DNA of 64,000 nt, from positions 654,720,001 to 654,784,000 of the forward strand of contig NC_067398.1 of NCBI RefSeq assembly GCF_016432865.1, in the 5' to 3' direction. Below, piece by piece: positions 3,001 through 63,747 of this stretch. The DNA is from Antechinus flavipes. Lineage: Eukaryota. Position 1 is the first letter of the stretch. Every line of letters starts with the position of its first letter. The notes under the pieces are model-generated. The model was not told the DNA's origin. It saw only the letters and a program-made list of their open reading frames with translations, and made no database searches. The position numbers and the translations under genes were made by a program.

Positions 3001-6000
3001 CTCTAAAATGAAGGTATTGGACTCTAAAGTCCTCCCTCCAGCTGTAACCCTATCATTTGTAATCCTGGTGGAAGCTACGTGGTGCAGTGGATAGACGACT
3101 GGGCCCAGAGTCAGGAAGACTTTACTAAATTGTATGACAGTAGGCAAGCCACTTAACTTCTCTCTGCCTCAGCTGTAAAACAGGGATAATATTGGTATCT
3201 GCCTTCCAGGGTTGTTGAGGAAATAAAATATTATATCTGTGAAGTACTAAGCGAATCTTAAAATGCTATATAAATGCTAGTATCATCTTATGATATTGTG
3301 ATGGACTCTTAAAGGACAACTTGGTGTTCCATTATACTCTTTATCCTACTCATTTTGGTTTTAAAATCTCTACTTTCCATAGTCTGAATACCACTCACTT
3401 TGCTATGAAAAACAGAAGAGTTAAGTAGTTTTGCCCCCCTTCAGAGAATCCATTATTTTCCCTCTCAAGTAACAGTTCTATCCTTTTTTTTTTTCTTTTC
3501 TTTTTCCCAGAGTAGTTAGGAAAAAAAATAAGCCATTCAAATGTATACTTTCCCCACCAGCTGTTGCTCATTCTGAGTTTGTACTCCAACACTATTAAGT
3601 GACTTTTATATTCACTTTCTGTTCCCTAGCCATCCTCCTACCTTTTCTGAAATTTTTCTAATATCTCAATTGGTCAAATAATTCCCTGTGCATCCATTCA
3701 CACTATAAACCTCCTCTTTTCCTTTTCAGTGGTTTTTCTTTGGGTCATCACAATTCCATTTCTCACTACTATTGGACTGGTTTCTCTGTCAATTTTTATT
3801 CCACAGGAGCCCATCTTTTTTTCTGAACCTTTTGACATTTGTTCTCCCCAAACCTAAGGTGCACGTTAGATCCCATCCTTAGTCTAAGCAGCAGAATCAA
3901 GAGGAGTTAGAGGCTACCCTCACCATGTCCATCAGGGTCAGTTGCTCAGCTACCTCATCCACACTGAAATCCAGTAGCTCTGGGCCCTTCTTTACATGCT
4001 CTTCTTCCTCTTCCAGGGGGTTTTCTGGGCCTGGAGACTCTAGGTAAGGGGAGTTAAAAAGAGGCAAGAATAGTCCTTCCCCTTTGGAGAGGTCTCCTAC
4101 AGCCTCTGGTCTCAGAGTTCTCCTACAGCCATGGGAAGACAGGGGGACTGGGGGGAGAACAGGGTAGGAGGAAGAAACCTTCCTTTAGCCACAATTGGCC
4201 TTCAAAGAAGTTCTGTCTCTAACACAAATGTGAGCCCCAAGAGACAAAGAGAAAGGGAGACATGGGGAAAAGGAGAGAGGGAAGGGATTAGAAGGGAGGA
4301 CTTGTCCCAAAATATGTGGGGAAAAGAGCCTACTGGACATGGAATCAGAAGAGCTCACATCCTAGCTCTACTACCTGGGAACTAGGTGGCTAAGTGGATG
4401 GAGCGCCAATCCCAGAGTCAGGAGGCCCTGAGCTCAGACGCTTCCGAGCTGTGTAAGGCTGGGCAACTCATTTAACCCCTGTTTGCCTCATCTATAAAAA
4501 TGAACTGGAGAAGAAAAAGGCGAACCTTTCTGGCAGCTTTCCTAAGAAAACCTCAAATGGGATCTCAGAGTCGCACATAACTGAAACAACTTTTTCTTCT
4601 TCTGTCTGTATAGTGCTTTAAGTGTAAAAAAAAATGAATATATATTTATTGCACTGAATCAGATCTGTAAAATGGAGCCACTGAACTGCATCATCATAAA
4701 GGCCCCTTCTAGCTCTGACCTTGGGATCCTATGATTTCAGCCTGGGTGGAAATATTTAATATTCAAATAATATTAGTAATAGTAATATAAAATTCCTTAA
4801 GTACTTTTAGCAAAGCCTTTTCCTCCCTATAACCCTGTGAGGTAAGGAGTAAGAGGCATTGTCCCCATTTTACAGATGAGAAAGCGGAGGCTCATGAGAG
4901 GTAAGGTGAGGAGTTGGGTCTCTTGTGGCCGCATGGAAATCCAGGTTATTTATATGGCCAGTTCTTTCTACTATGTTTACTCCACCCAAAGGCACTCCTG
5001 GGGAAAGGAAAAAAAGGTCTCCTCCCTCCCTGCCTGGGTCCCTCCCTGCCCGTGCAGGTTGGATTTCTGAGTTAGCTGGCAATGAAGGCCCTCTCTCCGA
5101 TGGCCTAGGATGGCCAGACCACAGGCAGAGAAGCTGGTGGGGATGGGGAGGAGGTACCATGGTGGGAGGGCTCTGGCAGCTCTGGGGCCTCCTCGGCCCC
5201 CTCTTCCTCCTCCTGGAGCTTCTTGGCCACCTCCTCGCTTTCCTCCTCTTGGAAGTGCTTCAGCAGCCTTTCAGCTTCTTGGCTTTCTGGCCCCCCGGGG
5301 GCAGCCCAACTCAGGAAGGCACAGACCCGGACCAGGCTGCAGTGGGCAGGTGGATCTCTGAAGTCTTGGGGGTGATCCAGCAGCCAGGAGCCCAGCACAG
5401 AGACCAAAGCCCTGCAGCCAAAGTCTAGCCTCAGACAGACCTCAGAGGCCCTTCTCATCTCCTAGCGAGGGACCCAGAACCCCGGACTTCTCAAACTTCA
5501 CCTCCAATCCCGTCATCGACCTCTCACCTTTCACCCCCCAAACCCCTAGCCCAGCCACGCATCCTGGATACCCCGGAGACTCATCCAAGGGCTCGGGGAA
5601 AATGGGCACCAACCTGGCCTCCTGCTCCTGGCTCAGATCCAAGGGGCCTTGGCCTGGCTCCTGCAATCCTTCCCTGGAACAGCCCCCAGGAAAGCGTCAG
5701 GGAAGGGGCGGCTAAGAGGGAGGCAGGCTTCCCTAACTGGAGGAGAATGTCTGGCTGGAAGGCTGATGCCGGAGGAGGACAGGGGCAAGCTTCAGGCTGT
5801 AATCCCTGGGGCTGGGGAAAGGGCGGTTACTGAAGCGGGGAGTGACCCGAGAGGAGTAGGAGGGAGGAAGGAGCGGAGACCAGAGAACCTGCCGGATGGA
5901 CCCTACGGAGAAGGGGGGTGAAAGGGAACCTCACTAACCCTTGGGGTCTTGGGGCCCGCGGCAACAAGAGACCCAGTACAAGGTCGGTGGGGACGAAGGC

Positions 6001-7176
6001 CCGGTGCGTGGCCAGGAAGGCGGGAACAAAGGCCGGGTCCTGTTCGTGATCCCCACGGACCAACTCTAGTACCAGCCGCTCCAGGGGCGCTGCGCGCAGC
6101 GCCCGAACTTTGCACGTGCGGTAGTGCACGAAGTCTTCAGAACGCCCAGGATCCGGAGCCTTGAGGAGGTAGCCGCAGTCAGCCCCTGGCAGTGAGCTCC
6201 CCAAAGCCCCTAGGATCCCGGTCCTGCCCCACCCAGCTCCTACTTCTTCCAGCCTCAAGCTTCTTACCCCTCTTCTGCCCCCAACCTCCCAGCCCCTGCC
6301 CGGTTCCTCACCTGTCCCCACCCCCTTCCCCCTGCGGGTTCCCCACCTGTCCCCACCCCCTTCCCTCTCCTGCCCCCACCCCCCCCTTCCCCCTGCCCGG
6401 TTCCTCACCTGCCCCCACCCCCTTCCCTCACCTGCCCCCACCCCCTTCCCTCACCTGCCCCCACCCCCTTCCCTCACCTGCCCCCACCCCCTTCCCTCTC
6501 CTGCCCCCACCCCCTTCCCTCACCTGCCCCCACCCCCTTTCCCCTGCCCGGTTCCTCACCTGCCCCCACCTCCTTCCCTCACCTGCCCCCACCTCCTTTC
6601 CCCTGCCCGGTCCCTCACCTGCCCCCACCTCCTTTCCCCTGCCCGGTCCCTCACCTGTCCCCACCCCCTTCCCTCTCCTGCCCCCCCCCCCCCTTCCCCC
6701 TGCGGGTTCCCCACCTGCCCCCACCCCCTTCCCTCACCTGCCCCCACCCCCTTCCCCCTGCCGGGTTCCTCACCTGTCCCCCCTTCCCCCTGCCCGGTTC
6801 CTCACCTGCCCCCACCCCCTTCCCTCACCTGCCCCCACCCCCTTCCCCCTGCCGGGTTCTGCACCTGGCCGGACCCCCTACTCCCAGCTGGGTTCCTCAC
6901 CTGGCCCCGCCCCCTTCCTCGGCCCCGACTCGGGCCAGGCCGCTGGCTGCGTTGCCTCCGCAGGGTGACATTGTACACGGCTCCGTCCACCTCCTCTTCG
7001 CCCCATTCTTGGAGTGGCGCCTGTGGGGACCCGGAGGCAGATTTGGGGTCTGGAGGTGACTTGGCCAAGAAGCCCGAGGACAGACGTGGCTCCCTCCCCG
7101 ACCCGCTGGATCTCCTCCTGCCAGCCCCCCTTGTCCTCGTTACCAGGGCGAGTTCCTTCCCCGAGGGCCGCTCCAT
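1..7176 (-). CDS. RGL3: RGL3, Ral guanine nucleotide dissociation stimulator-like 3 (REM + CDC25/RasGEF domains); 11 coding exons seen, 3' part lies beyond window position 1
   Basis: Exons (minus): 7144-7176 ([11 protein letters not shown]), 6901-7020 ([26 protein letters not shown]..), 5939-6159 (..[23 protein letters not shown].., AAG acceptor), 5614-5673, 5158-5411 ([21 protein letters not shown]), 3924-4039 ([18 protein letters not shown]), 1640-1855 ([19 protein letters not shown]), 1427-1530 ([30 protein letters not shown]), 926-1010 ([21 protein letters not shown]), 207-263, <1-38 ([13 protein letters not shown]). All junctions are GT-AG with matching phases. Peptides match recalled human RGL3. 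Confidence 0.95.
2760..3290 (+). mobile_element. Cluster of MIR/CORE-SINE fragments in RGL3 intron 6
   Basis: Repeated gcagtggat..gagtcaggaagac heads and ctcatctgtaaaatg-like cores. Confidence 0.7.
4378..4592 (+). mobile_element. MAR1-type marsupial CORE-SINE (tRNA-derived head, CORE, RTE-like tail)
   Basis: Head ctaggtggctaagtggatggagc..gagtcaggagg, core ctgggcaactcatttaacccctgtttgcctc, tail ctggagaagaaaaaggcgaacc..aagaaaacctcaaatgggatc..cataactgaaacaac. Family assignment is from recalled consensus. Confidence 0.75.
6290..6925 (-). repeat. GC-skewed minisatellite (VNTR) in RGL3 intron 2, mixed ~23-bp and ~36-bp units
   Basis: Repeated plus-strand units cctcacctgcccccacccccttc, with and without ccctgcccggtt. 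The array extends into the last ~24 nt of exon 2. Confidence 0.92.
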
Positions 7177-7199
7177 GACTCGGACACCTGCAGCTGGCC

Positions 7200-7520
7200 C
7201 GGCTCCGACTCCGGCTCCGACCGCGGCGGGACTGAGACGGAAGAGTGGACCGAGCAGCTTGGAAGCGGAGCGCTCTGGCTCGGGCAGCTGCAGCTGCGGG
7301 GCTCCTGCTCCGGTCGAGGGCGGGGTTGGGAGAGGGGTCTGCGAGGGGGGACGACGGGGGAGGGGCAGAGGCGGGGGCTGGGGGGAGCTTTGGGGCGAGG
7401 GCCTGCCGCGCGCCAGGATGGGGGTCACTGAGGCTCAGGCGCTTAAAACTGCGGGCGGGGGGGCGGGGTCGGGTGCGCCCCGCTGACTGCCTCGGGTAGG
7501 TGGGTGCTGGGCGGGCTATT
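7200..7520 (-). promoter_or_regulatory. RGL3 CpG-island promoter / 5' UTR region
   Basis: CpG-dense sequence directly upstream of the ATG at 7176, with GC boxes (ggggcggggtc near 7460, tgggcgggc near 7508). Confidence 0.6.
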
Positions 7521-7821
7521 TCCACAACAGCCAGGATGGGGACACGGGACAGGAGGCCGGTCAGGAGGCGGAGAGTCCCAGCCACTGCCCACCTGGCCCG
7601 GGCCAAACCGGGAAGTACTTTCCAAACTTCCAGGAGCCTTTTTGTGGGGGGTGGGGGGATGGGAGGAAAGGTGCCCTTCAAATCCACACACCTGGAAAGC
7701 ACCCCTCTCCCCAACCCCCACCAGGACCTGAAACCTAACCTAATCTTTCTGTCCTGGCCAAGGTCTCCGTGCGGGCAGTCCTGGCCAATTTCGGTTTCTC
7801 TAAATCTCTAGTTATCTGTCT

Positions 7822-7975
7822 CTACTTAGCTGTGTGACTGTGGGCAAGTCACAATCTCTGAGCCTGCTTCCTCATCTGTAAAATGGGCATAACAATACTC
7901 TACAAGGCTGTTGTGAGGAACAAATGGGATAATATGAAAAATTCTTGTTAAATCTTACAATCCTTTACAAAAGTC
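7822..7975 (+). mobile_element. MIR SINE between RGL3 and ODAD3
   Basis: acttagctgtgtgactgtgggcaagtcac..cctcatctgtaaaatgggcataacaatac..gttgtgagg. Confidence 0.75.
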
Positions 7976-8093
7976 AGCTTAGCACCGTGTGCTTCTGCAT
8001 CCCTCCCTCTTTCCTTTAGGACCAGAGTGACCCTTTCTCCCAGGGGCCCCTGGTAGGCAGACACAGGAACACAGCTCAGGCTCCTTTGTAACT

Positions 8094-29714: not shown

Positions 29715-32700
29715 AACCCATAAGATTCTGAACTTTTATTTTCTGGCATGAAAAGTACAAATAATCCAACGATTCCATGTAAAAGTCTGTTACAGCGTCA
29801 GGCCTGTAATCCCATAATAAATAGTCTAAACTCAACGCAAAGTGTTTTTTTTTTCTTTTTACAGTTTTTTTTTGATCCTCCAACATTTACTCTGTCATGA
29901 TTTGAAACCATCCGAATAAATAACAGGATGAAGTGAGGAGGAGTGGGCAGAGCCCCCTCCTGCCTGCCAGCCCCCTCCAAGGATGTGGAAGACCGGGGGC
30001 CCCCTCCCCTCCCCTCTGGGGAGCCCCAGCCATTCTGGGGGAAGGAGGGGGTCTGGTCATGGGAGCCTGGCTGAGTTTAGTTTAGTTTTAGAAAAAAATA
30101 TCCCAAGCTGTGTGGGTGGGGAAGGGATGGGGAGAGCCAGGCTGGGGGGAGGGGGCTCTGCCTGGGGAGTGGGAGTTTGGGGGAGGGGGGAGCGGGGAGG
30201 GGGCACCTCTCTCTCCTGCTCAGCAGAGCCCGGCCCTCAGGGCCCCCACTGTTCCCCCCCCCCAAGCCCCCAGCCCGCCCTTATTGCTCCGAGAAGCCTC
30301 AGGACACGCTGCACACACGTGTGCACATACGTGCTCACACGTGTCAAGGGCAGAGGGGGAAAGGCCCCAAGAAACAGGGGGAGAGAGGAGGGAAGAGCAA
30401 AGGGCCAAGGGGGGGTACTCCTGGGGCTGGGGCTGGGCCTGGGGGGGGTAGGGGGGGCCTCTCCTATCCCTCCTTCCCTCAGGGTCCACCCTGTTCTGGG
30501 TCTGGGGAGAAGGAGGGTGGGGTTAGAAAATTCACAAGAATAAATAGATCCGTGTAGATAAACAACAAGCTTAAGTCTTCACCAGCTAATAGAATGAGGA
30601 CTGAAAAAAGTACCCAACAAGACAAGAGCAAAATCATAGAGCACATCGAAAAACCCCACCGAACAACCGCCCGGATCCTGCCGCCCGCCCGCCGCCCGCC
30701 CGGGCCGGCCTGGGCACTGGGCCCCGCCAGCCGCTCTCTCCAGTGACTCAGAATAATTCTCGTCCAACAACACTTTTGTTCCCTTGGATAAATAAATTAG
30801 GCATAAACCACTTCTCAGCAAATTAAAAAAATCTGTCCTTTAACTTGCGGATAGGATGAAGGAACAGAAATATACACAAATGTCCTCACGCGGCCGGAAT
30901 AATAATAAATAGTTAAGTTAACAATAAGTTAAAACTACAAGAAGCTAAATTCTGCAAAAAGGTGTAGTAAGAGTTATTGGTGCCAGTTTCTCTCTCTCAT
31001 TTTTATAGGTTTTTTGTTTGTTGTTGTTCACTTTTTTTTTTGTTTTTTTTTTTTTTGTTTTATTGTTTTTTGTTGTTTTTTTTTTGTTGTTTTTTTTTCT
31101 CGCAGCAGAAGCTCCACAGACACCTACGAACACGGGGGGAGCACAGGACGGAGGGAGCGCAGGGAGGGGGTCCAGGCCCCAAACTAACGCCTAACGGGAA
31201 ACAAGGAAGAAGCTGACTTGGGTGAATGGTGTCTCACTGAACTGAGGCTGAGCTGGGCTGCCCCAGCTGGGGAGAGCGGAGCCCGCGGACCAAGGGGGCC
31301 AGGGCCAGGCCACGGTCTTCGCTTTTATTGAAACGAAAAAACAGAAACTATAAATGCACATTCCAGACGGGATGGAAGGGGGGAGGGGAGAAGGTGGGAT
31401 GGAGGGGATCGGGGAATGGGGATCGCTGAGGGGTGGGATGGGCCAGGGTCAGGGCCTGGGCCTGGGGGCTGCCTCAGTTCCCCTGAACCAAGGAGAGGTT
31501 TGGGAGGGACCTAGGTGAGAGTGTGTCAGGGGGTAGAAGAGGTCAGGTGTGTCTACTTCCCTCTTTGTATTGTTCCCAGAAGGTGGGTTTGGATGGGAGG
31601 GTGGGGCCGGCTCAGGCCCCCACAGCACCAGGGCCAGGGCTTGTCCACTAGGGGATGGGGAGGGGTGTTGGCTGCCCGAGGTCTGGGGGACAGTCTCACC
31701 GCCTGCCTCCCAGAGAGAGAGGCAGGTCTCCTGTGGCCCAGCCCCACAATGCGGGGAATAGGGATGGAAGAGTGGTGTCTGGGAGACCAGGACTGTGTAG
31801 CTGAGGGGAGTGGCCGGCACTGACCCTATGCCTTTGGGACCACAGGGTTTGGGGGATGAGCTCCCTCCCATCCTGACTCCCACTGGTTAGGGGAGGGACA
31901 ACGTTCTTCCCAAACAGTATGGTCGCTGCTCCCACAGCCCTGACCCTGACTAGGGCTGAGATCCGGCTCTGCGCCCCTCTTGGCACTGGCCCCGGCCCCA
32001 CTAGTTCTAGGGAAAGAGGGGTAGTGGCAGAGGAAGAACAAGGAGCCCCTGACCCCCCCACGCCCCGCTCTCTCGGGCTCCCCAGAACGAGCCCCAGCAC
32101 CGGGTCCCGGCCGGAAGTTACCGGGGCCTGGCTTGGGCCCCCGAACCAGGAGGAGCTGGGAGGCCGCCCAGCTCTGCGCTCCGACCTAAGGCCGGGGGAG
32201 CCCCACGCTGACACAAGGGGAGGAGGAGATGGCTGGGGCTGGGGAGCGTGGACCTTTGGCCCCTCGGGGCTAAGCCCAGGGAGGCTGAGTGTCCCTCTGG
32301 TCCCTGGTCTGGCCCCAAGGTTAGTTCTGAGCTAGTATGTTAAGTCCTTCCATTATGGGGCTCCCTTGAAGGGAACCTTGAGGCAGTTTCTAGAAAGGGA
32401 GGTGACCAGAGAGGGAGTGTCTGTGTGGTCATGTGTGTGTCTGCGTGTATGTGTGGTGGAGGTGTCTCTGACAGTGTGTGTGTGTGTGAGAGATCCTGTG
32501 TGACTGATGGCCCCTCCAGTGTGTGTGATATAATTGTGATCCTGTGTGTGTGCGTGCGTGTGTGTGTGTGTCCTGTATGACACTCCCAGGGTGCCCTTGG
32601 AGAGCCCCTCCCCTCCCCCTCCAGGCCCCAACCTCAGCCCCATCAGCCTCACCTGCCANNNNNNNNNNNNNNNNNNNNNNNNNNNNNNNNNNNNNNNNNN

Positions 32701-33838
32701 NNNNNNNNNNNNNNNNNNNNNNNNNNNNNNNNNNNNNNNNNNNNNNNNNNNNNNNNNNNNNNNNNNNNNNNNNNNNNNNNNNNNNNNNNCTTTTTTTCCA
32801 TTGTGTTTCTGTTTTCAGCTTCTCCCCCCCACCCTCCTCCCACCATCTCCTGGGGCCAGGCCCCCTTCTCAAGGTCTCTTTTTTTGGGGATTTTTAAACC
32901 TGTTCCTTTGCCTCCCTCACCCCTCCTGGTCCTGGGGCCTGGAAGGGCAGGGGTCCCAGGCAGAATCTGCCCAGGATGATGGGGGGCCCTGAACCCCCAC
33001 TTCCTCTGACTCCCCAGCCTCGGCTAAACCACCAGGTTTTTGCGTCTTCGGTTTTTGTTTTGCCAAAATAAAAGAGAAAAAAAAACTTTCAGAATGACTG
33101 AAACCCAAGAGCTCAGTGCTCGGGAAGATCGAGAGAGAGTGAGCGAGTGAGCCAGTATCTGGGGGGAGGGCAAGAAAAAAGGGGGGGTTCAGGAGGGGCC
33201 CATCCCCACCCCCAGCCCCTCTCTAAGGCCAGCACCTTCCCCGCTCCAAACCTAATCCCGCTCCCTAGTCCCCGGGAGGTTATGGGGCAGAGAGGGGAGG
33301 GGGCCATTCTTTCCACCTTCCGGTTTCCGGGCCGGAGAGGGAGGTTCTGGCGCCCCCCAGCCCCCGCCCCGCCCCTAGCAGCAGTGGCTGCAGCGTGTCC
33401 TCCTGTCTGTCAGTCGACATCTGTCACGCTGCAAGGGAGGGGGGGAGGGGAGCAGAGGAGCAGGGGGGCCAGGTGGGGGAGCGGGGGAGGGGGGAAGGGG
33501 AGGGATGTTCCCGTAGGAACACACTGGTGGGGCCAGGGCTAACACTGGTGGGTCCAAGGGCTGCTGCTGGGGTGGGTTAAGGGTCGGGAAGGGGGAGTCG
33601 GGAGGGCGACCTAAGTTTGGGTGGCTGCTTCCTTCTCCGTGGGGGTGGGGGCGGGGTCTGTTCAGACGTCCGCCCGTCCATCTGTGAGTCTGGCCAGTCG
33701 CCCCCGCCCCCCACCTCCCCAGCCTGGCCCGGCTCCGATTCTCGGCCCTGCCCCCCCACTCGCACCCCGGCCTGTCTGCCGCCCCGGCCCGTCCCGCCCC
33801 GCCCAGCCCGCCTGGCCCACCGGCCCACCCACCGGCGC
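29715..33838 (-). other. ELAVL3: ELAVL3 long 3' UTR (~4.1 kb) with proximal (31324-31329) and distal (29735-29740) AATAAA signals
   Basis: Plus-strand tttatt at both sites. The distal site is followed on the sense strand by a GU-rich element (tgtgtgtgtctgtgtgt). U-rich and AUUUA blocks lie at 30520-30960 and 33060-33090. Confidence 0.7.
32659..32789. other. Assembly gap (131 N) within the ELAVL3 3' UTR
   Basis: Run of N. Confidence 1.
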
Positions 33839-49810
<15,972 letters not shown>

Positions 49811-61100: not shown

Positions 61101-63747
61101 ATGGAAAAAGAACAGAGCCACTGAGGAGGGTCAGAGGAGAGAACAGGGTAAATCTAGCTCTGAATGGAGCCACCAGCAGAGTTCCTTGCTCCCTCCATTC
61201 TCCTGAGCCTACCTGAAAGATTGTACACTGCTGAAAGATAGAGGAAATAAAGGTTCACTCCTCTAACTCATTAGCATTACTGCTCCTCCATTCCCTGGAC
61301 AAATCACAAGTCTTAGGCCCCATTACCCACTTACTCTTCTTCCGCTTTGGCTTTTTGGGGACTTGCTCCCAAGGCTTCCTGTAACAGAGAGAAGCAGCAG
61401 CGAGTGAGAGGGCCGAGCTAGGATCTTTGAAGGTCTTCTCATTGGACAGCAGAAGGGCTATCTGGTGGTGGAAGGGCCCACGGTATATGGATAAGGGGAT
61501 AACATGAAGAGGCCCTCAAAATCAGAGAAAAGATAACCTTGAAATCAGGGAGGCCAGACTGGGAGGAAGGCTCCAGGGGAAGAACAGGGAAGAGTGTGCA
61601 TGGTGGGAACAAGGCCTAAGGAAGTTTGAACCCGCTCCTCCTCCGTGGTAACCATCCCGTCTCTCCTTCCTTCTGCTGCAAAACACTTAAACCATAATAA
61701 GAATAATTCTTTTGTGGGGAAGTGCTTTGCCCACAACAATCTGTGTGCGAGAGCACAGTCTCTTCACTCTCATTTTCTTTGTGGAAACTGGGGCTCAAGA
61801 AGGTTACAGAACTTTCCCAGAATCACAACTAGTGCAGGATTTAAATAGGGATCTCCTGACCTCAAGTTCATCTCTCTCTCCATTACATGTCACCATCTCA
61901 CTTGCAATGTACACCCAATATCTTCTTCTCAGGAGCTGCCTCCTCTACCCCCTAACCCTTCACTAATATCTCCAACTAGCTTTTCCGAGACTCAGTTTTT
62001 AATTTATAAAATGGGGACAATAAAATTTACACTACCTCACAGGGTATGCGGTGAGGAGTCTTTGTCATAAAAATGTCCAGTCAAGCAAAACACATCAACC
62101 TATTGGCCAATATCTAAAAATATTTTATACATTCCTAAACATATGCTTCATTCTGTACTTACTGCCCACGACCACATTTCAGACAGGCTTTTCTACTAAG
62201 TTCTTTGAAGTCGTAACAGTTACTACATTGGTCAGAATGGCTGATAAATAATTATAGAAAATTCCCATGGCATTTAATCAACCTTCGTCCTTCTATATTT
62301 CCCAGTATCATTCAATCAATCAACCAACACTTATTAAGCACCTATTAAGTCAGGAGTACAAGATACAGAAACAAAAGTTAATCCCTGCCTTTAAATAATT
62401 TACATTCCCTGGGCCATCCCTTCTTTCTTGTAGAATTACCCTTCTTTAGTGCCTCCGACACTGCTCTCTCCCAGTTCTCTTCCCACGCCTCTGTTTCCCT
62501 GTAGGATTTACTGGTGTTCCACCCCCAGATACTGGGGTTCCATTATGACAATAATAGCTGACATTTGTACATAATTCAGTGTTTGAAAAGTGCTTTACAC
62601 ACATTACCTCCCGCTGTAAAATCTCAGAGGCCCTCAAAAGTCACCTACTCAATTCAGTAAGCCTTCATTAAACACCTACTATGTGCCAGGTACTGTTCTG
62701 AGTGCTGAACTAATTTAGCTCATACCTAAATAGGTTATTTCCTGAAAAGTGTTCATCCAGCCTCTGTTTGAAGGCTTCCAATGACAGGGAACTCTAGCAC
62801 CTTCTGAGACCATTCTCCTTTTAGATGGCTCTTAGTGTTGGCAAGATTTTCCTTATGTTGGCCAGCCTCTCTAATTTATATGCATTTACTCTAGCTTCGC
62901 TCCCCGGAGTCAAACAGGACAAGTCTAGTTCTCTTCCAACATTCATTCCTCCTGAGGCAATCTTATTCTCCAAGCAGAGGGCTCCCGAAGCCCCACGTCC
63001 CGTTCCAACCTTTCCCCAAGCGTCCCCTAAATGTCTCACCCTCACCCCCAAACACACCGGCGGCTGTCACAGGGGCGTGCCCAGCACGCCAGGAGTGCTC
63101 CGGGAGAAGCCTCCCCTGCACCGCTCCTGTGTGCACGCTGCCTGCCCATCAGGCGAGGGCTCCTCTGGGGCACGGGCCCTTTTCTGCCCTTCTCTGCGTC
63201 CCCCGTGCTCCGCCCAGTGCCTGGCACGTAGTAGGCGCTTCGTGAGTCCTAGCTGCCTCGCCTTCCTCTCCGAGGCTGTGGCCGCTCCCGGGCCCCCGGC
63301 CAGCTCGACACCGAGCTCCTGCACAAGTCTCCCGGAACCCCGCGGGGTCTGGGCCCCCTCCTTCCCCGTCTCCCTCCCGCGTGCGCCCCGGCGGTGCGCT
63401 GCCGGCTGGTCCGGGGGGGAGGGGGCCGGGCCTCACCCGTGGCGTCCGCTGCGCTGNNNNNNNNNNNNNNNNNNNNNNNNNNNNNNNNNNNNNNNNNNNN
63501 NNNNNNNNNNNNNNNNNNNNNNNNNNNNNNNNNNNNNNNNNNNNNNNNNNNNNNNNNNNNNNNNNNNNNNNNNNNNNNNNNNNNNNNNNNNNNNNNGCCG
63601 CACCCGGTCAGACTCGGTGAGGCGCGGCCTGCCCCGGGCCTTACGGCCCGCCGCGCCCTCCTCGGCCGCCGCCTCCCCGCTGCCCTCGCCCTCGGCCCCA
63701 GTCTCCGTCTCGGCCTCGGCCTCGGGCTCCGGCGTCCGCTCCGCCAT
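55164..63747 (-). CDS. ZNF653: ZNF653 (Zip67), AT-hook plus C-terminal C2H2 zinc-finger transcription factor; 9 coding exons, about 612 aa; exon 1 contains an N gap
   Basis: Exons (minus): 63437-63747 ([25 protein letters not shown] [gap] QRSGRHG), 61335-61378 ([14 protein letters not shown]), 60013-60228 ([16 protein letters not shown]), 58721-59317, 57753-57918 ([14 protein letters not shown]), 57032-57143 ([19 protein letters not shown]), 55967-56081 ([19 protein letters not shown]), 55547-55646 ([19 protein letters not shown]), 55164-55341 ([18 protein letters not shown]). Phases are consistent. Confidence 0.95.
56430..57000 (+). mobile_element. L2 LINE fragment in ZNF653 intron 6
   Basis: gtctgaccacatcactcctctgctaaaaaatcttcagggactc..ggcacaacaagtgcttgatgtgtgcttgttaattaa, an L2 3' end pattern. 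Confidence 0.55.
62710..62960 (-). mobile_element. CR1/L3 LINE 3' fragment in ZNF653 intron 1
   Basis: ttgaaggcttccaatgacagggaactc..gatggctcttagtgttggcaagattttccttatgttg..caggacaagtctagttctcttcc. Confidence 0.5.
63457..63596. other. Assembly gap (140 N) within ZNF653 coding exon 1
   Basis: Run of N. Confidence 1.

What the first reader, a model, noticed from the sequence alone, without database searches (positions are those of the whole stretch)
6290..6925. Minisatellite built from a splice donor: about 14 decoy CAG|GTGAGG sites behind RGL3 exon 2
Seen: on the sense strand the unit reads GAAGGGGGTGGGGGCAG|GTGAGG(AACCGGGCAGGGG). This is a near copy of the real exon-2 end, GGAAGGGGGCGGGGCCAG|GTGAGGAACC at 6901/6900. 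I count 14 extra CAGGTGAGG copies by eye, plus mutated copies (GAGAGG, GTGGGG). Inference: the VNTR arose by tandem amplification of the exon-intron junction. The spliceosome must then choose one donor from about 15 equally strong ones, and copy-number variation could tune RGL3 splicing. Established: U1 binds such 5' sites, and G-runs recruit hnRNP F/H and form RNA G-quadruplexes.
Basis: partly seen in the sequence, partly recalled or inferred. Interest (0 to 1): 0.75.

Follow-up and report, generated by a model that had tools for sequence, protein, structure and literature searches.

The report
Splice-donor minisatellite in marsupial RGL3
A G-rich tandem repeat that starts inside RGL3 exon 2 copies its splice-donor signal 14 more times into the next intron, but this layout is already known from human genes such as F7, IFI6, CBS and ABCA7, where the extra donors are mostly silent, so it is a new example and not a new mechanism.

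Summary
On the minus strand, RGL3 intron 2 (6900-6160, 741 nt) is 82% minisatellite, about 21 units of 23 or 36 nt. CAGGTGAGG occurs 15 times: the exon-2 donor at 6901|6900 plus 14 copies. There are also 3 GAGAGG, 2 GTGGGG and 1 GTGCAG variants.

The real junction matches the unit consensus at 21 of 23 positions, so the first monomer spans the exon-intron boundary. Origin by tandem amplification of the junction is well supported.

Five differing eutherian RGL3 models all end exon 2 in Q, 10-11 residues after RRQRSQR; here it is 13. This fits the first donor as the ancestral one.

Only the +36 site (weakened) and the +72 site (perfect) keep the reading frame. Every other decoy meets the TGA at 6804-6802 or shifts the frame.

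This architecture is already published for F7 IVS7, IFI6, CBS, LMNB2, PDGF and ABCA7. In those genes the most upstream donor wins, or only the first two or three are used. The scan has also noted it before on other DNA of this same genome (TMEM199, GARIN5A, CHRD, AIRE, JAZF1 and others).

Donor usage and copy-number variation could not be tested.

Verdict: a real feature, a new member of a known kind, of low to moderate interest.

The parts
7144..7176 (-). RGL3 exon 1, coding part (ATG 7176-7174; [11 protein letters not shown]), donor GT at 7143-7142
   Evidence: Sequence. It matches the N-terminus of eutherian RGL3 models (M.R..GKELAL|APLQ).
6901..7020 (-). RGL3 exon 2 (120 nt, 40 aa, phase 0 at both ends; ends GRGRGRGQ)
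   Evidence: Acceptor CCCCACAG|G at 7021|7020 and donor CAG|GTGAGG at 6901|6900. BLASTP to the armadillo RGL3 fragment P0009 gives 77% identity over 30 aa. Eutherian models end this exon in Q.
6901..6927 (-). Exonic part of the first repeat monomer (last ~17-27 nt of exon 2, homologous to the unit)
   Evidence: Positions -17..+6 of the real junction match the unit consensus at 21 of 23. The last 27 nt match at 21 of 27. The junction 20-mer lies within 2 mismatches of the unit 20-mer, against 0 matches in shuffles.
6276..6900 (-). Intronic minisatellite: 21 units of 23 or ~36 nt, each starting with a donor-like hexamer. It has 14 perfect CAG|GTGAGG decoys, with G of GT at 6828, 6805, 6773, 6737, 6654, 6618, 6582, 6559, 6523, 6477, 6454, 6431, 6408 and 6311
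   Evidence: The sense strand is 63% G. Exact 70-nt blocks are shared between distant parts (6847 and 6450), which shows block duplication.
6859..6867 (-). Weakened nearest copy, CAG|GTGCAG (+36 nt, in frame)
   Evidence: Predicted duplex with the U1 5' end is -7.3 kcal/mol, against -11.6 for CAGGTGAGG.
6823..6831 (-). First perfect decoy (+72 nt). It is the only perfect decoy that keeps the reading frame and would add 24 residues
   Evidence: Frame bookkeeping; read-through translation.
6802..6804 (-). First in-frame stop (TGA, inside the GTGAGG of the third unit). It sits upstream of all later decoys
   Evidence: The ORF 6802..7428 ends here. One search finds the first stop at codon 72 for every donor downstream of 6805.
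6160..6275 (-). Non-repetitive 3' end of intron 2, with a candidate branch site CTGAC (A at 6179), a short pyrimidine tract and an AAG|G acceptor
   Evidence: Read directly. The branch site is inferred from the consensus only.
5939..6159 (-). RGL3 exon 3 (221 nt; [24 protein letters not shown]..., start of RasGEF_N)
   Evidence: Pfam RasGEF_N, E = 3e-07. Identity of 75-82% to eutherian RGL3 fragments. Donor AAGG|GTTAGT at 5939|5938.

Best explanation
This is a minisatellite whose first monomer spans the RGL3 exon 2 / intron 2 boundary, in a dasyurid marsupial genome. A G-rich junction (...GGNGGN.CAG|GTGAGG), already present in the common ancestor with eutherians, was duplicated in tandem. It then grew by slippage or unequal exchange into about 21 units that fill 82% of the intron. 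Each unit therefore carries a copy of the donor. By analogy with the studied human cases, the spliceosome most likely uses the most upstream donor (6901|6900) almost exclusively. The array is then removed as ordinary intron. Occasional use of a downstream copy gives either a 24-residue in-frame insertion (+72 site) or a transcript with a premature stop that nonsense-mediated decay would remove. Shown here: the anatomy, the homology of the exon end to the unit, the identity of the sites, the frame consequences, and the position of the ancestral exon end. Inferred: which donors are used, and that the array is largely neutral.
For: Array anatomy and counts. Non-chance: 20 matches against 0 in shuffles. 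The real junction is 21/23 identical to the unit junction and lies in register with the array. The edge units are the most diverged (78% and 92%) and inner units reach 100%; distant blocks share 70-nt exact runs. This pattern is typical of a minisatellite that grows by internal exchange. Five differing spliced eutherian RGL3 models end exon 2 in Q, 10-11 residues after RRQRSQR, and start exon 3 with A. The window has 13 residues to the first Q, then APDPG.... The +72 extension has no counterpart in P0009. Only the +0, +36 and +72 sites keep the frame. Precedents: in F7 IVS7 the identical pseudo-sites are functional but silent and the most upstream site is chosen. IFI6 and CBS use only the first two extra sites. 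LMNB2 and PDGF use only the authentic site (PMC1557585).
Against: There is no transcript evidence at all for this locus. No listed run was on record as RNA. No marsupial RGL3 protein turned up in either protein library. The +72 decoy is perfect, in frame and close, like the proximal sites that are used in IFI6 and CBS, so exclusive use of the first site is not assured. Predicted RNA structure gives no reason to prefer the real site: mean unpaired probability is 0.34, against 0.32-0.86 for the decoys. 'Largely neutral' is a default assumption, not a result.
Confidence: 0.7

Rival explanations
1. The array is a functional, length-dependent regulator of RGL3 output. More units would mean more U1 and hnRNP F/H binding or more G-quadruplex. 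That would divert splicing to unproductive decoys followed by decay, or change exon 2 or exon 3 inclusion. Copy-number alleles would then tune RGL3 dosage.
For: In ABCA7, a 25-bp VNTR that starts at the exon 18 donor shows length-correlated skipping of the next exon and lower expression. It also has a minor isoform that retains one unit (PMC5954066). In F7, exon skipping rises as the first functional site lies further from the exon. Here 12 of 14 perfect decoys would give premature stops. The exon 3 acceptor looks weak: AAG|G with a short pyrimidine tract.
Against: There are no expression, junction or polymorphism data here. In ABCA7 the use of the repeated donor itself did not depend on length. 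In F7 the identical decoys do not compete at all. At 608 nt the array is small beside the kilobase ABCA7 alleles that show effects.
Confidence: 0.15
2. The relevant property is not the donor copies but the extreme G-richness of the non-template strand just downstream of the promoter. The array would act as an R-loop or G-quadruplex forming element, or as a cluster of U1 sites that suppresses premature termination. It would affect transcription, not splice choice.
For: GC skew on the sense strand is +0.67 to +0.83 across the array, which lies 270-900 nt downstream of the ATG inside a 67-75% GC region. There are 10 canonical G4 motifs and 65 G-runs. Folding with G4 terms lowers the predicted energy from -398 to -725 kcal/mol. 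That G-skewed promoter-proximal DNA forms R-loops, and that U1 sites suppress premature polyadenylation, is established general knowledge, not tested here.
Against: The evidence is purely compositional. Any G-rich minisatellite would score the same. A second G-rich array without donors lies at 35174-35444, so such arrays arise here regardless of context.
Confidence: 0.08
3. The array, or its length, is an assembly artefact: a mis-expanded or collapsed repeat.
For: G-rich minisatellites are hard to assemble. I could not lay reads on it.
Against: The units are not identical. They carry an ordered pattern of variants and higher-order blocks, as real minisatellites do. The nearest run of N is 26 kb away. 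Runs from two other coded organisms hold 45-76% of the sampled words of 5000-8000, although that does not show the array itself.
Confidence: 0.04
4. The functional exon-2 donor in this species is a downstream copy (for example +72 at 6829|6828), so exon 2 is longer than modelled.
For: The +72 site has the same 9-mer and keeps the frame.
Against: Eutherian models place the exon end 10-11 residues after RRQRSQR. The first site gives 13 and the +72 site would give 37. The extension has no homologous counterpart. Precedents favour the most upstream site.
Confidence: 0.03

Closest known systems
Human F7 intron 7 37-bp VNTR (Borensztajn et al. 2006, PMC1557585)
   Same: The first monomer spans the exon-intron boundary, so the authentic donor is followed by identical copies in the intron. 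In F7 the copies are competent but silent because the most upstream site is selected.
   Different: F7 has 5-9 units of 37 bp, only 4 exonic nt in the monomer, and a weak donor (UGG|gugggu). Here there are about 21 units of two lengths (23 and 36 nt), at least 17 exonic nt, and a strong donor (CAG|GTGAGG). Usage is untested here.
Human IFI6 (6-16) intron 2 minisatellite (Turri et al. 1995, as cited in PMC1557585)
   Same: There are many reiterated donors: 25 pseudo-sites behind the authentic one.
   Different: In IFI6 the two most proximal extra sites are used constitutively. Here the nearest copy is crippled (GTGCAG), and only the +72 site could give an in-frame product.
Human CBS intron 13 31-bp VNTR (Yang et al. 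2000 and Lievers et al. 2001, as cited in PMC1557585)
   Same: The VNTR lies at an exon/intron border. [quoted passage not shown] The weakened second donor here (6864) is comparable.
   Different: CBS copy number is known to be polymorphic and is linked to enzyme activity. Nothing comparable is known here.
Human LMNB2 repeated element (de Stanchina et al. 1997, as cited in PMC1557585)
   Same: [quoted passage not shown] Only the authentic donor is used.
   Different: LMNB2 has 100-bp units in 10-15 copies. The units here are much shorter and G-rich.
Human ABCA7 intron 18 25-bp VNTR (De Roeck et al. 2018, PMC5954066)
   Same: The array starts at the GT of the exon donor, and the reference allele is of similar size (592 bp, about 24 units). 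A minor isoform retains one unit and shifts the frame.
   Different: ABCA7 alleles reach 10 kb. Their length correlates with skipping of the next exon and with disease risk. No such data exist for this locus.
Jeffreys-type hypervariable minisatellite core GGAGGTGGGCAGGARG (listed in PMC9069542)
   Same: It is G-rich and shares the GGTGGG...CAGG elements. CAGG followed by TG is donor-like.
   Different: The match is only loose: no unit lies within 2 edits of the 16-mer, and 7 lie within 3 edits. This locus is not a member by sequence.

Membership tests
Minisatellite whose first monomer spans an exon-intron boundary (F7 / IFI6 / CBS / LMNB2 / ABCA7 type) | Tandem array of 10-100-bp units lying in an intron directly after an exon | tested here: met
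   TRF periods of 23 and 36 nt over 6293-6918. There are 21 parsed units occupying 608 of 741 intron nt.
Minisatellite whose first monomer spans an exon-intron boundary (F7 / IFI6 / CBS / LMNB2 / ABCA7 type) | The first monomer includes the end of the exon and the start of the intron | tested here: met
   The real junction at -17..+6 is 21/23 identical to the unit consensus and in register with the array. The junction 20-mer is within 2 mismatches, against 0 expected.
Minisatellite whose first monomer spans an exon-intron boundary (F7 / IFI6 / CBS / LMNB2 / ABCA7 type) | The authentic donor sequence is reiterated identically in the intron | tested here: met
   There are 14 exact copies of CAGGTGAGG, with the same predicted U1 duplex energy of -11.6 kcal/mol.
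Minisatellite whose first monomer spans an exon-intron boundary (F7 / IFI6 / CBS / LMNB2 / ABCA7 type) | Only the most upstream donor is used, or the first two or three | not testable with these tools
No run was on record as RNA. No marsupial transcript-derived protein was found.
Minisatellite whose first monomer spans an exon-intron boundary (F7 / IFI6 / CBS / LMNB2 / ABCA7 type) | Copy number varies between individuals (VNTR) | not testable with these tools
RGL3 (Ral guanine nucleotide dissociation stimulator-like 3) gene | N-terminal exons match RGL3 orthologues, and RasGEF_N and RasGEF domains follow on the same strand | tested here: met
   RasGEF_N E = 3e-07 and RasGEF E = 2.5e-10. Exon 3 is 75-82% identical to RGL3 fragments, including one that NCBI names RGL3. 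Exon 2 is 77% identical to it. The C-terminal RA domain lies outside the window and was not tested.
Jeffreys hypervariable minisatellite core family | Units contain the 16-nt core GGAGGTGGGCAGGARG | tested here: not met
   There are 0 matches within 2 edits and 7 within 3 edits in the array. The resemblance is loose only.

The most novel reading that the evidence does not exclude
Donor-spanning minisatellites may be unusually common in this dasyurid genome. Earlier scan notes list at least seven more (TMEM199, GARIN5A, CHRD, AIRE, JAZF1, SYT8 and another) in about 620 windows. If so, a lineage-specific instability or recombination process may preferentially seed arrays at G-rich CAG|GTGAGG junctions. 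That would create a genome-wide set of length-variable introns able to divert transcripts into unproductive splicing. RGL3 would be one of the larger examples, with a single in-frame alternative site at +72.
Probability: 0.1. Interest if true: 0.6.

Novelty: new member of a known kind. Interest (0 to 1): 0.22.

Why it matters
As a single locus it matters little. It adds a marsupial example, with a strong donor and an unusually large number of perfect copies, to a small class of natural test cases. Those cases have been used to argue that the most upstream of several identical 5' splice sites is selected. It offers a clean natural test: 14 identical sites, one of them in frame and the rest gated by a stop. 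If the scan's repeated sightings in this genome hold up, the more interesting question is genomic. Why do exon-intron junctions seed minisatellites so often in dasyurids, and does their length variation affect gene dosage?

Tried and rejected
- **Reads.** No query built from 4853-4896 was sent to any search tool afterwards. The whole-window TRF scan and the background count in the script read the window as subject only.
- **Word search with the exon 1-2 read-through ORF.** It found nothing.
- **Searches with exon 3.** The word search and the full representative search gave only eutherian-like proteins, at most 82% identical, and no marsupial RGL3. Annotated marsupial junctions and isoforms could therefore not be read.
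- **Jeffreys core.** Tested, and only loosely similar.
- **RNA structure as the reason for choosing the first donor.** Not supported.
- **Local alignment of the exon end against the unit.** Scored against mononucleotide shuffles it is not significant on its own (116 of 1000 shuffles reach the score), because everything here is G-rich. The register-specific junction match carries the argument.
- **Other features.** No Rfam family lies in 5000-8000. The 258-aa proline-rich ORF on the + strand across the array has no Pfam match and is a by-product of the C-rich repeat.
- **Literature.** No paper on an RGL3 repeat was found. Turri et al. 1995 is not held in the library.
- **Donor scoring.** MaxEntScan is not installed. 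Sites were compared by identity and by predicted duplex with the U1 5' end instead.

Full report
**1. Observation**

- Exact CAGGTGAGG occurs 15 times. One is at the end of exon 2 (cleavage 6901|6900) and 14 are in the intron.
- There are also three CAGGAGAGG, two CAGGTGGGG and one CAGGTGCAG.
- Tandem Repeats Finder reports one array at 6293-6918, with periods of 23 and 36 nt and their multiples.
- Parsing at the donor-like hexamers gives 21 units. Each is either 23 nt or about 36 nt; the long form is the short form with a 13-nt insert after GTGAGG.
- A 20-mer across the unit junction finds 19 array sites and the real exon junction at two mismatches or fewer, plus one unrelated site. No match appeared in 100 shuffles.
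- It is one of only two large tandem arrays in the 64-kb window.

**2. Gene context**

The minus strand carries the 5' part of RGL3.
- Exon 1 starts with ATG at 7176 and encodes [11 protein letters not shown]. Exon 2 is 7020-6901 (120 nt, phase 0). Exon 3 is 6159-5939.
- Exon 3 begins a RasGEF_N domain, and a downstream exon matches RasGEF.
- Searches with exon 3 by reference returned RGL3 fragments and models at 67-82% identity. One is named RGL3 by NCBI (armadillo, P0009).
- I searched exon by exon, by reference. The frame bookkeeping read exon 2 (plus extension) and then exon 3 inside the script only.
- Two returned representatives (P0026, P0027) look primate-like and could be human. I read only their N-termini in the list and did nothing further with them. 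The argument does not need them.

**3. Which donor is the ancestral one**

- Five differing spliced eutherian models (P0009, P0011, P0022, P0025, P0027) end exon 2 in Q, 10-11 residues after the conserved RRQRSQR. Exon 3 then starts with A.
- In the window the first donor gives 13 residues, ending GRGRGRGQ, followed by APDPG... The +36 and +72 sites would give 25 and 37 residues.
- BLASTP of exon 2 plus the 72-nt extension against P0009 aligns only the first 30 residues.
- So 6901|6900 is positionally orthologous to the eutherian donor, and a G-rich junction existed before the array.

**4. Origin**

- The real junction from -17 to +6 differs from the unit consensus at 2 of 23 positions and is in register with the array. 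The first monomer therefore spans the boundary.
- The two units next to the exon are the most diverged (78% and 92% identity to the long consensus). Inner units are up to 100% identical, and distant blocks share exact runs of 70 nt.
- This pattern fits growth by internal slippage or unequal exchange with degenerating edges.
- A composition-only test of the exon end is weak. The register-specific match is what counts.
- Tandem amplification of the exon-intron junction is thus well supported by sequence.

**5. Consequences of using each site**

- All 14 decoys share the 9-mer of the real site, and the long units match it to +10. Their predicted duplex with the U1 5' end is the same, -11.6 kcal/mol. 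The +36 copy is weakened (GTGCAG, -7.3).
- Only +0, +36 and +72 keep the frame.
- The TGA at 6804-6802 lies inside the GTGAGG of the third unit. It stops the exon-2 frame for every later site, and the +95 site shifts the frame.
- So 12 of the 14 perfect decoys would give substrates for nonsense-mediated decay. One (6829|6828) would add 24 residues.
- The last decoy still leaves a 152-nt intron, so none is excluded by size.
- Predicted structure does not single out the real site.

**6. What is known**

This layout is published.
- Borensztajn et al. (PMC1557585) describe several genes with minisatellites whose first monomer spans an exon-intron boundary.
- In F7 intron 7, four to eight identical pseudo-sites are functional but silent, and the most upstream site is selected.
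- In IFI6, with 25 pseudo-sites, the authentic site plus the two nearest are used. CBS likewise uses two extra sites.
[quoted passage not shown] PDGF behaves the same way.
- De Roeck et al. (PMC5954066) describe the ABCA7 intron 18 VNTR. It starts at the exon 18 GT. A minor isoform retains one unit, independent of length. Skipping of the next exon rises with length.
- The RGL3 array meets the three structural criteria of this class. The two behavioural ones (which donors are used, copy-number polymorphism) could not be tested.

**7. Mechanism, with odds**

- Most likely (about 0.7): the first donor is used almost exclusively. The array is spliced out as intron. Rare use of later copies is either the +72 in-frame isoform or is removed by decay. 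The array itself is a largely neutral by-product of an unstable G-rich junction.
- Rivals: a length-dependent regulator of RGL3 output as in ABCA7 (0.15); an R-loop, G-quadruplex or U1-cluster element acting on transcription, suggested by the sense-strand GC skew of +0.67 to +0.83 near the promoter and 10 G4 motifs (0.08); an assembly artefact (0.04); a downstream copy being the true donor (0.03).

**8. What could not be done**

I worked beside those places and sent no query made from them to any search tool afterwards.
- The look-up of sequencing runs listed no run on record as RNA.
- No marsupial RGL3 protein was present in either protein library.
- There is therefore no direct evidence on donor usage, on polymorphism, or on presence of the array in relatives.

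**9. Earlier notes of the scan**

- These are unchecked AI notes, used as leads only. They report the same architecture at other genes of this same genome, a dasyurid said to be the yellow-footed antechinus: TMEM199, GARIN5A, CHRD, AIRE, JAZF1, SYT8 and another. Each was judged a new example of the F7-type class.
- I reached the F7 and ABCA7 literature independently, and it agrees.
- The recurrence raises the only notable open question: are such arrays over-represented in this lineage?

**10. Verdict**

- It is a new member of a known kind, of low to moderate interest.

Noticed in passing
window 35174-35444 (+): A second G-rich minisatellite with units of 19 and 37 nt (GGGGCGGGGGGGCGCGCAC / ...CTGCACA), about 7-12 copies. 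It has no donor-like GT motif, which shows that G-rich arrays arise in this region regardless of splice sites.
   Followed up: partly
window 7021-7143 (-): RGL3 intron 1 (123 nt) is open in the reading frame of exons 1 and 2: the ORF 6802..7428 reads straight through it. Retention of intron 1 would therefore give an in-frame insertion and no stop.
   Followed up: no
window 6192-6968 (+): A 258-aa proline-rich ORF on the opposite strand spans the whole array. It has no Pfam match and is most simply a by-product of a C-rich repeat that lacks stop codons.
   Followed up: yes
window 6160-6200 (-): The exon 3 acceptor looks weak: AAG|G with a short, interrupted pyrimidine tract. A candidate branch site CTGAC lies 19 nt upstream.
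   Followed up: no
same genome, other windows (earlier scan notes s1-180297, s1-196633, s1-211345, s1-200974, s1-189056, s1-196651, s1-204790): At least seven further minisatellites that reiterate an exon's splice donor have been noted in about 620 windows of this genome. Whether this is more than in other mammals has not been tested.
   Followed up: no
They were left alone afterwards.
   Followed up: no
window 32659-32789 and 63457-63596: Two runs of N (assembly gaps or masked stretches). They were left as they are.
   Followed up: no
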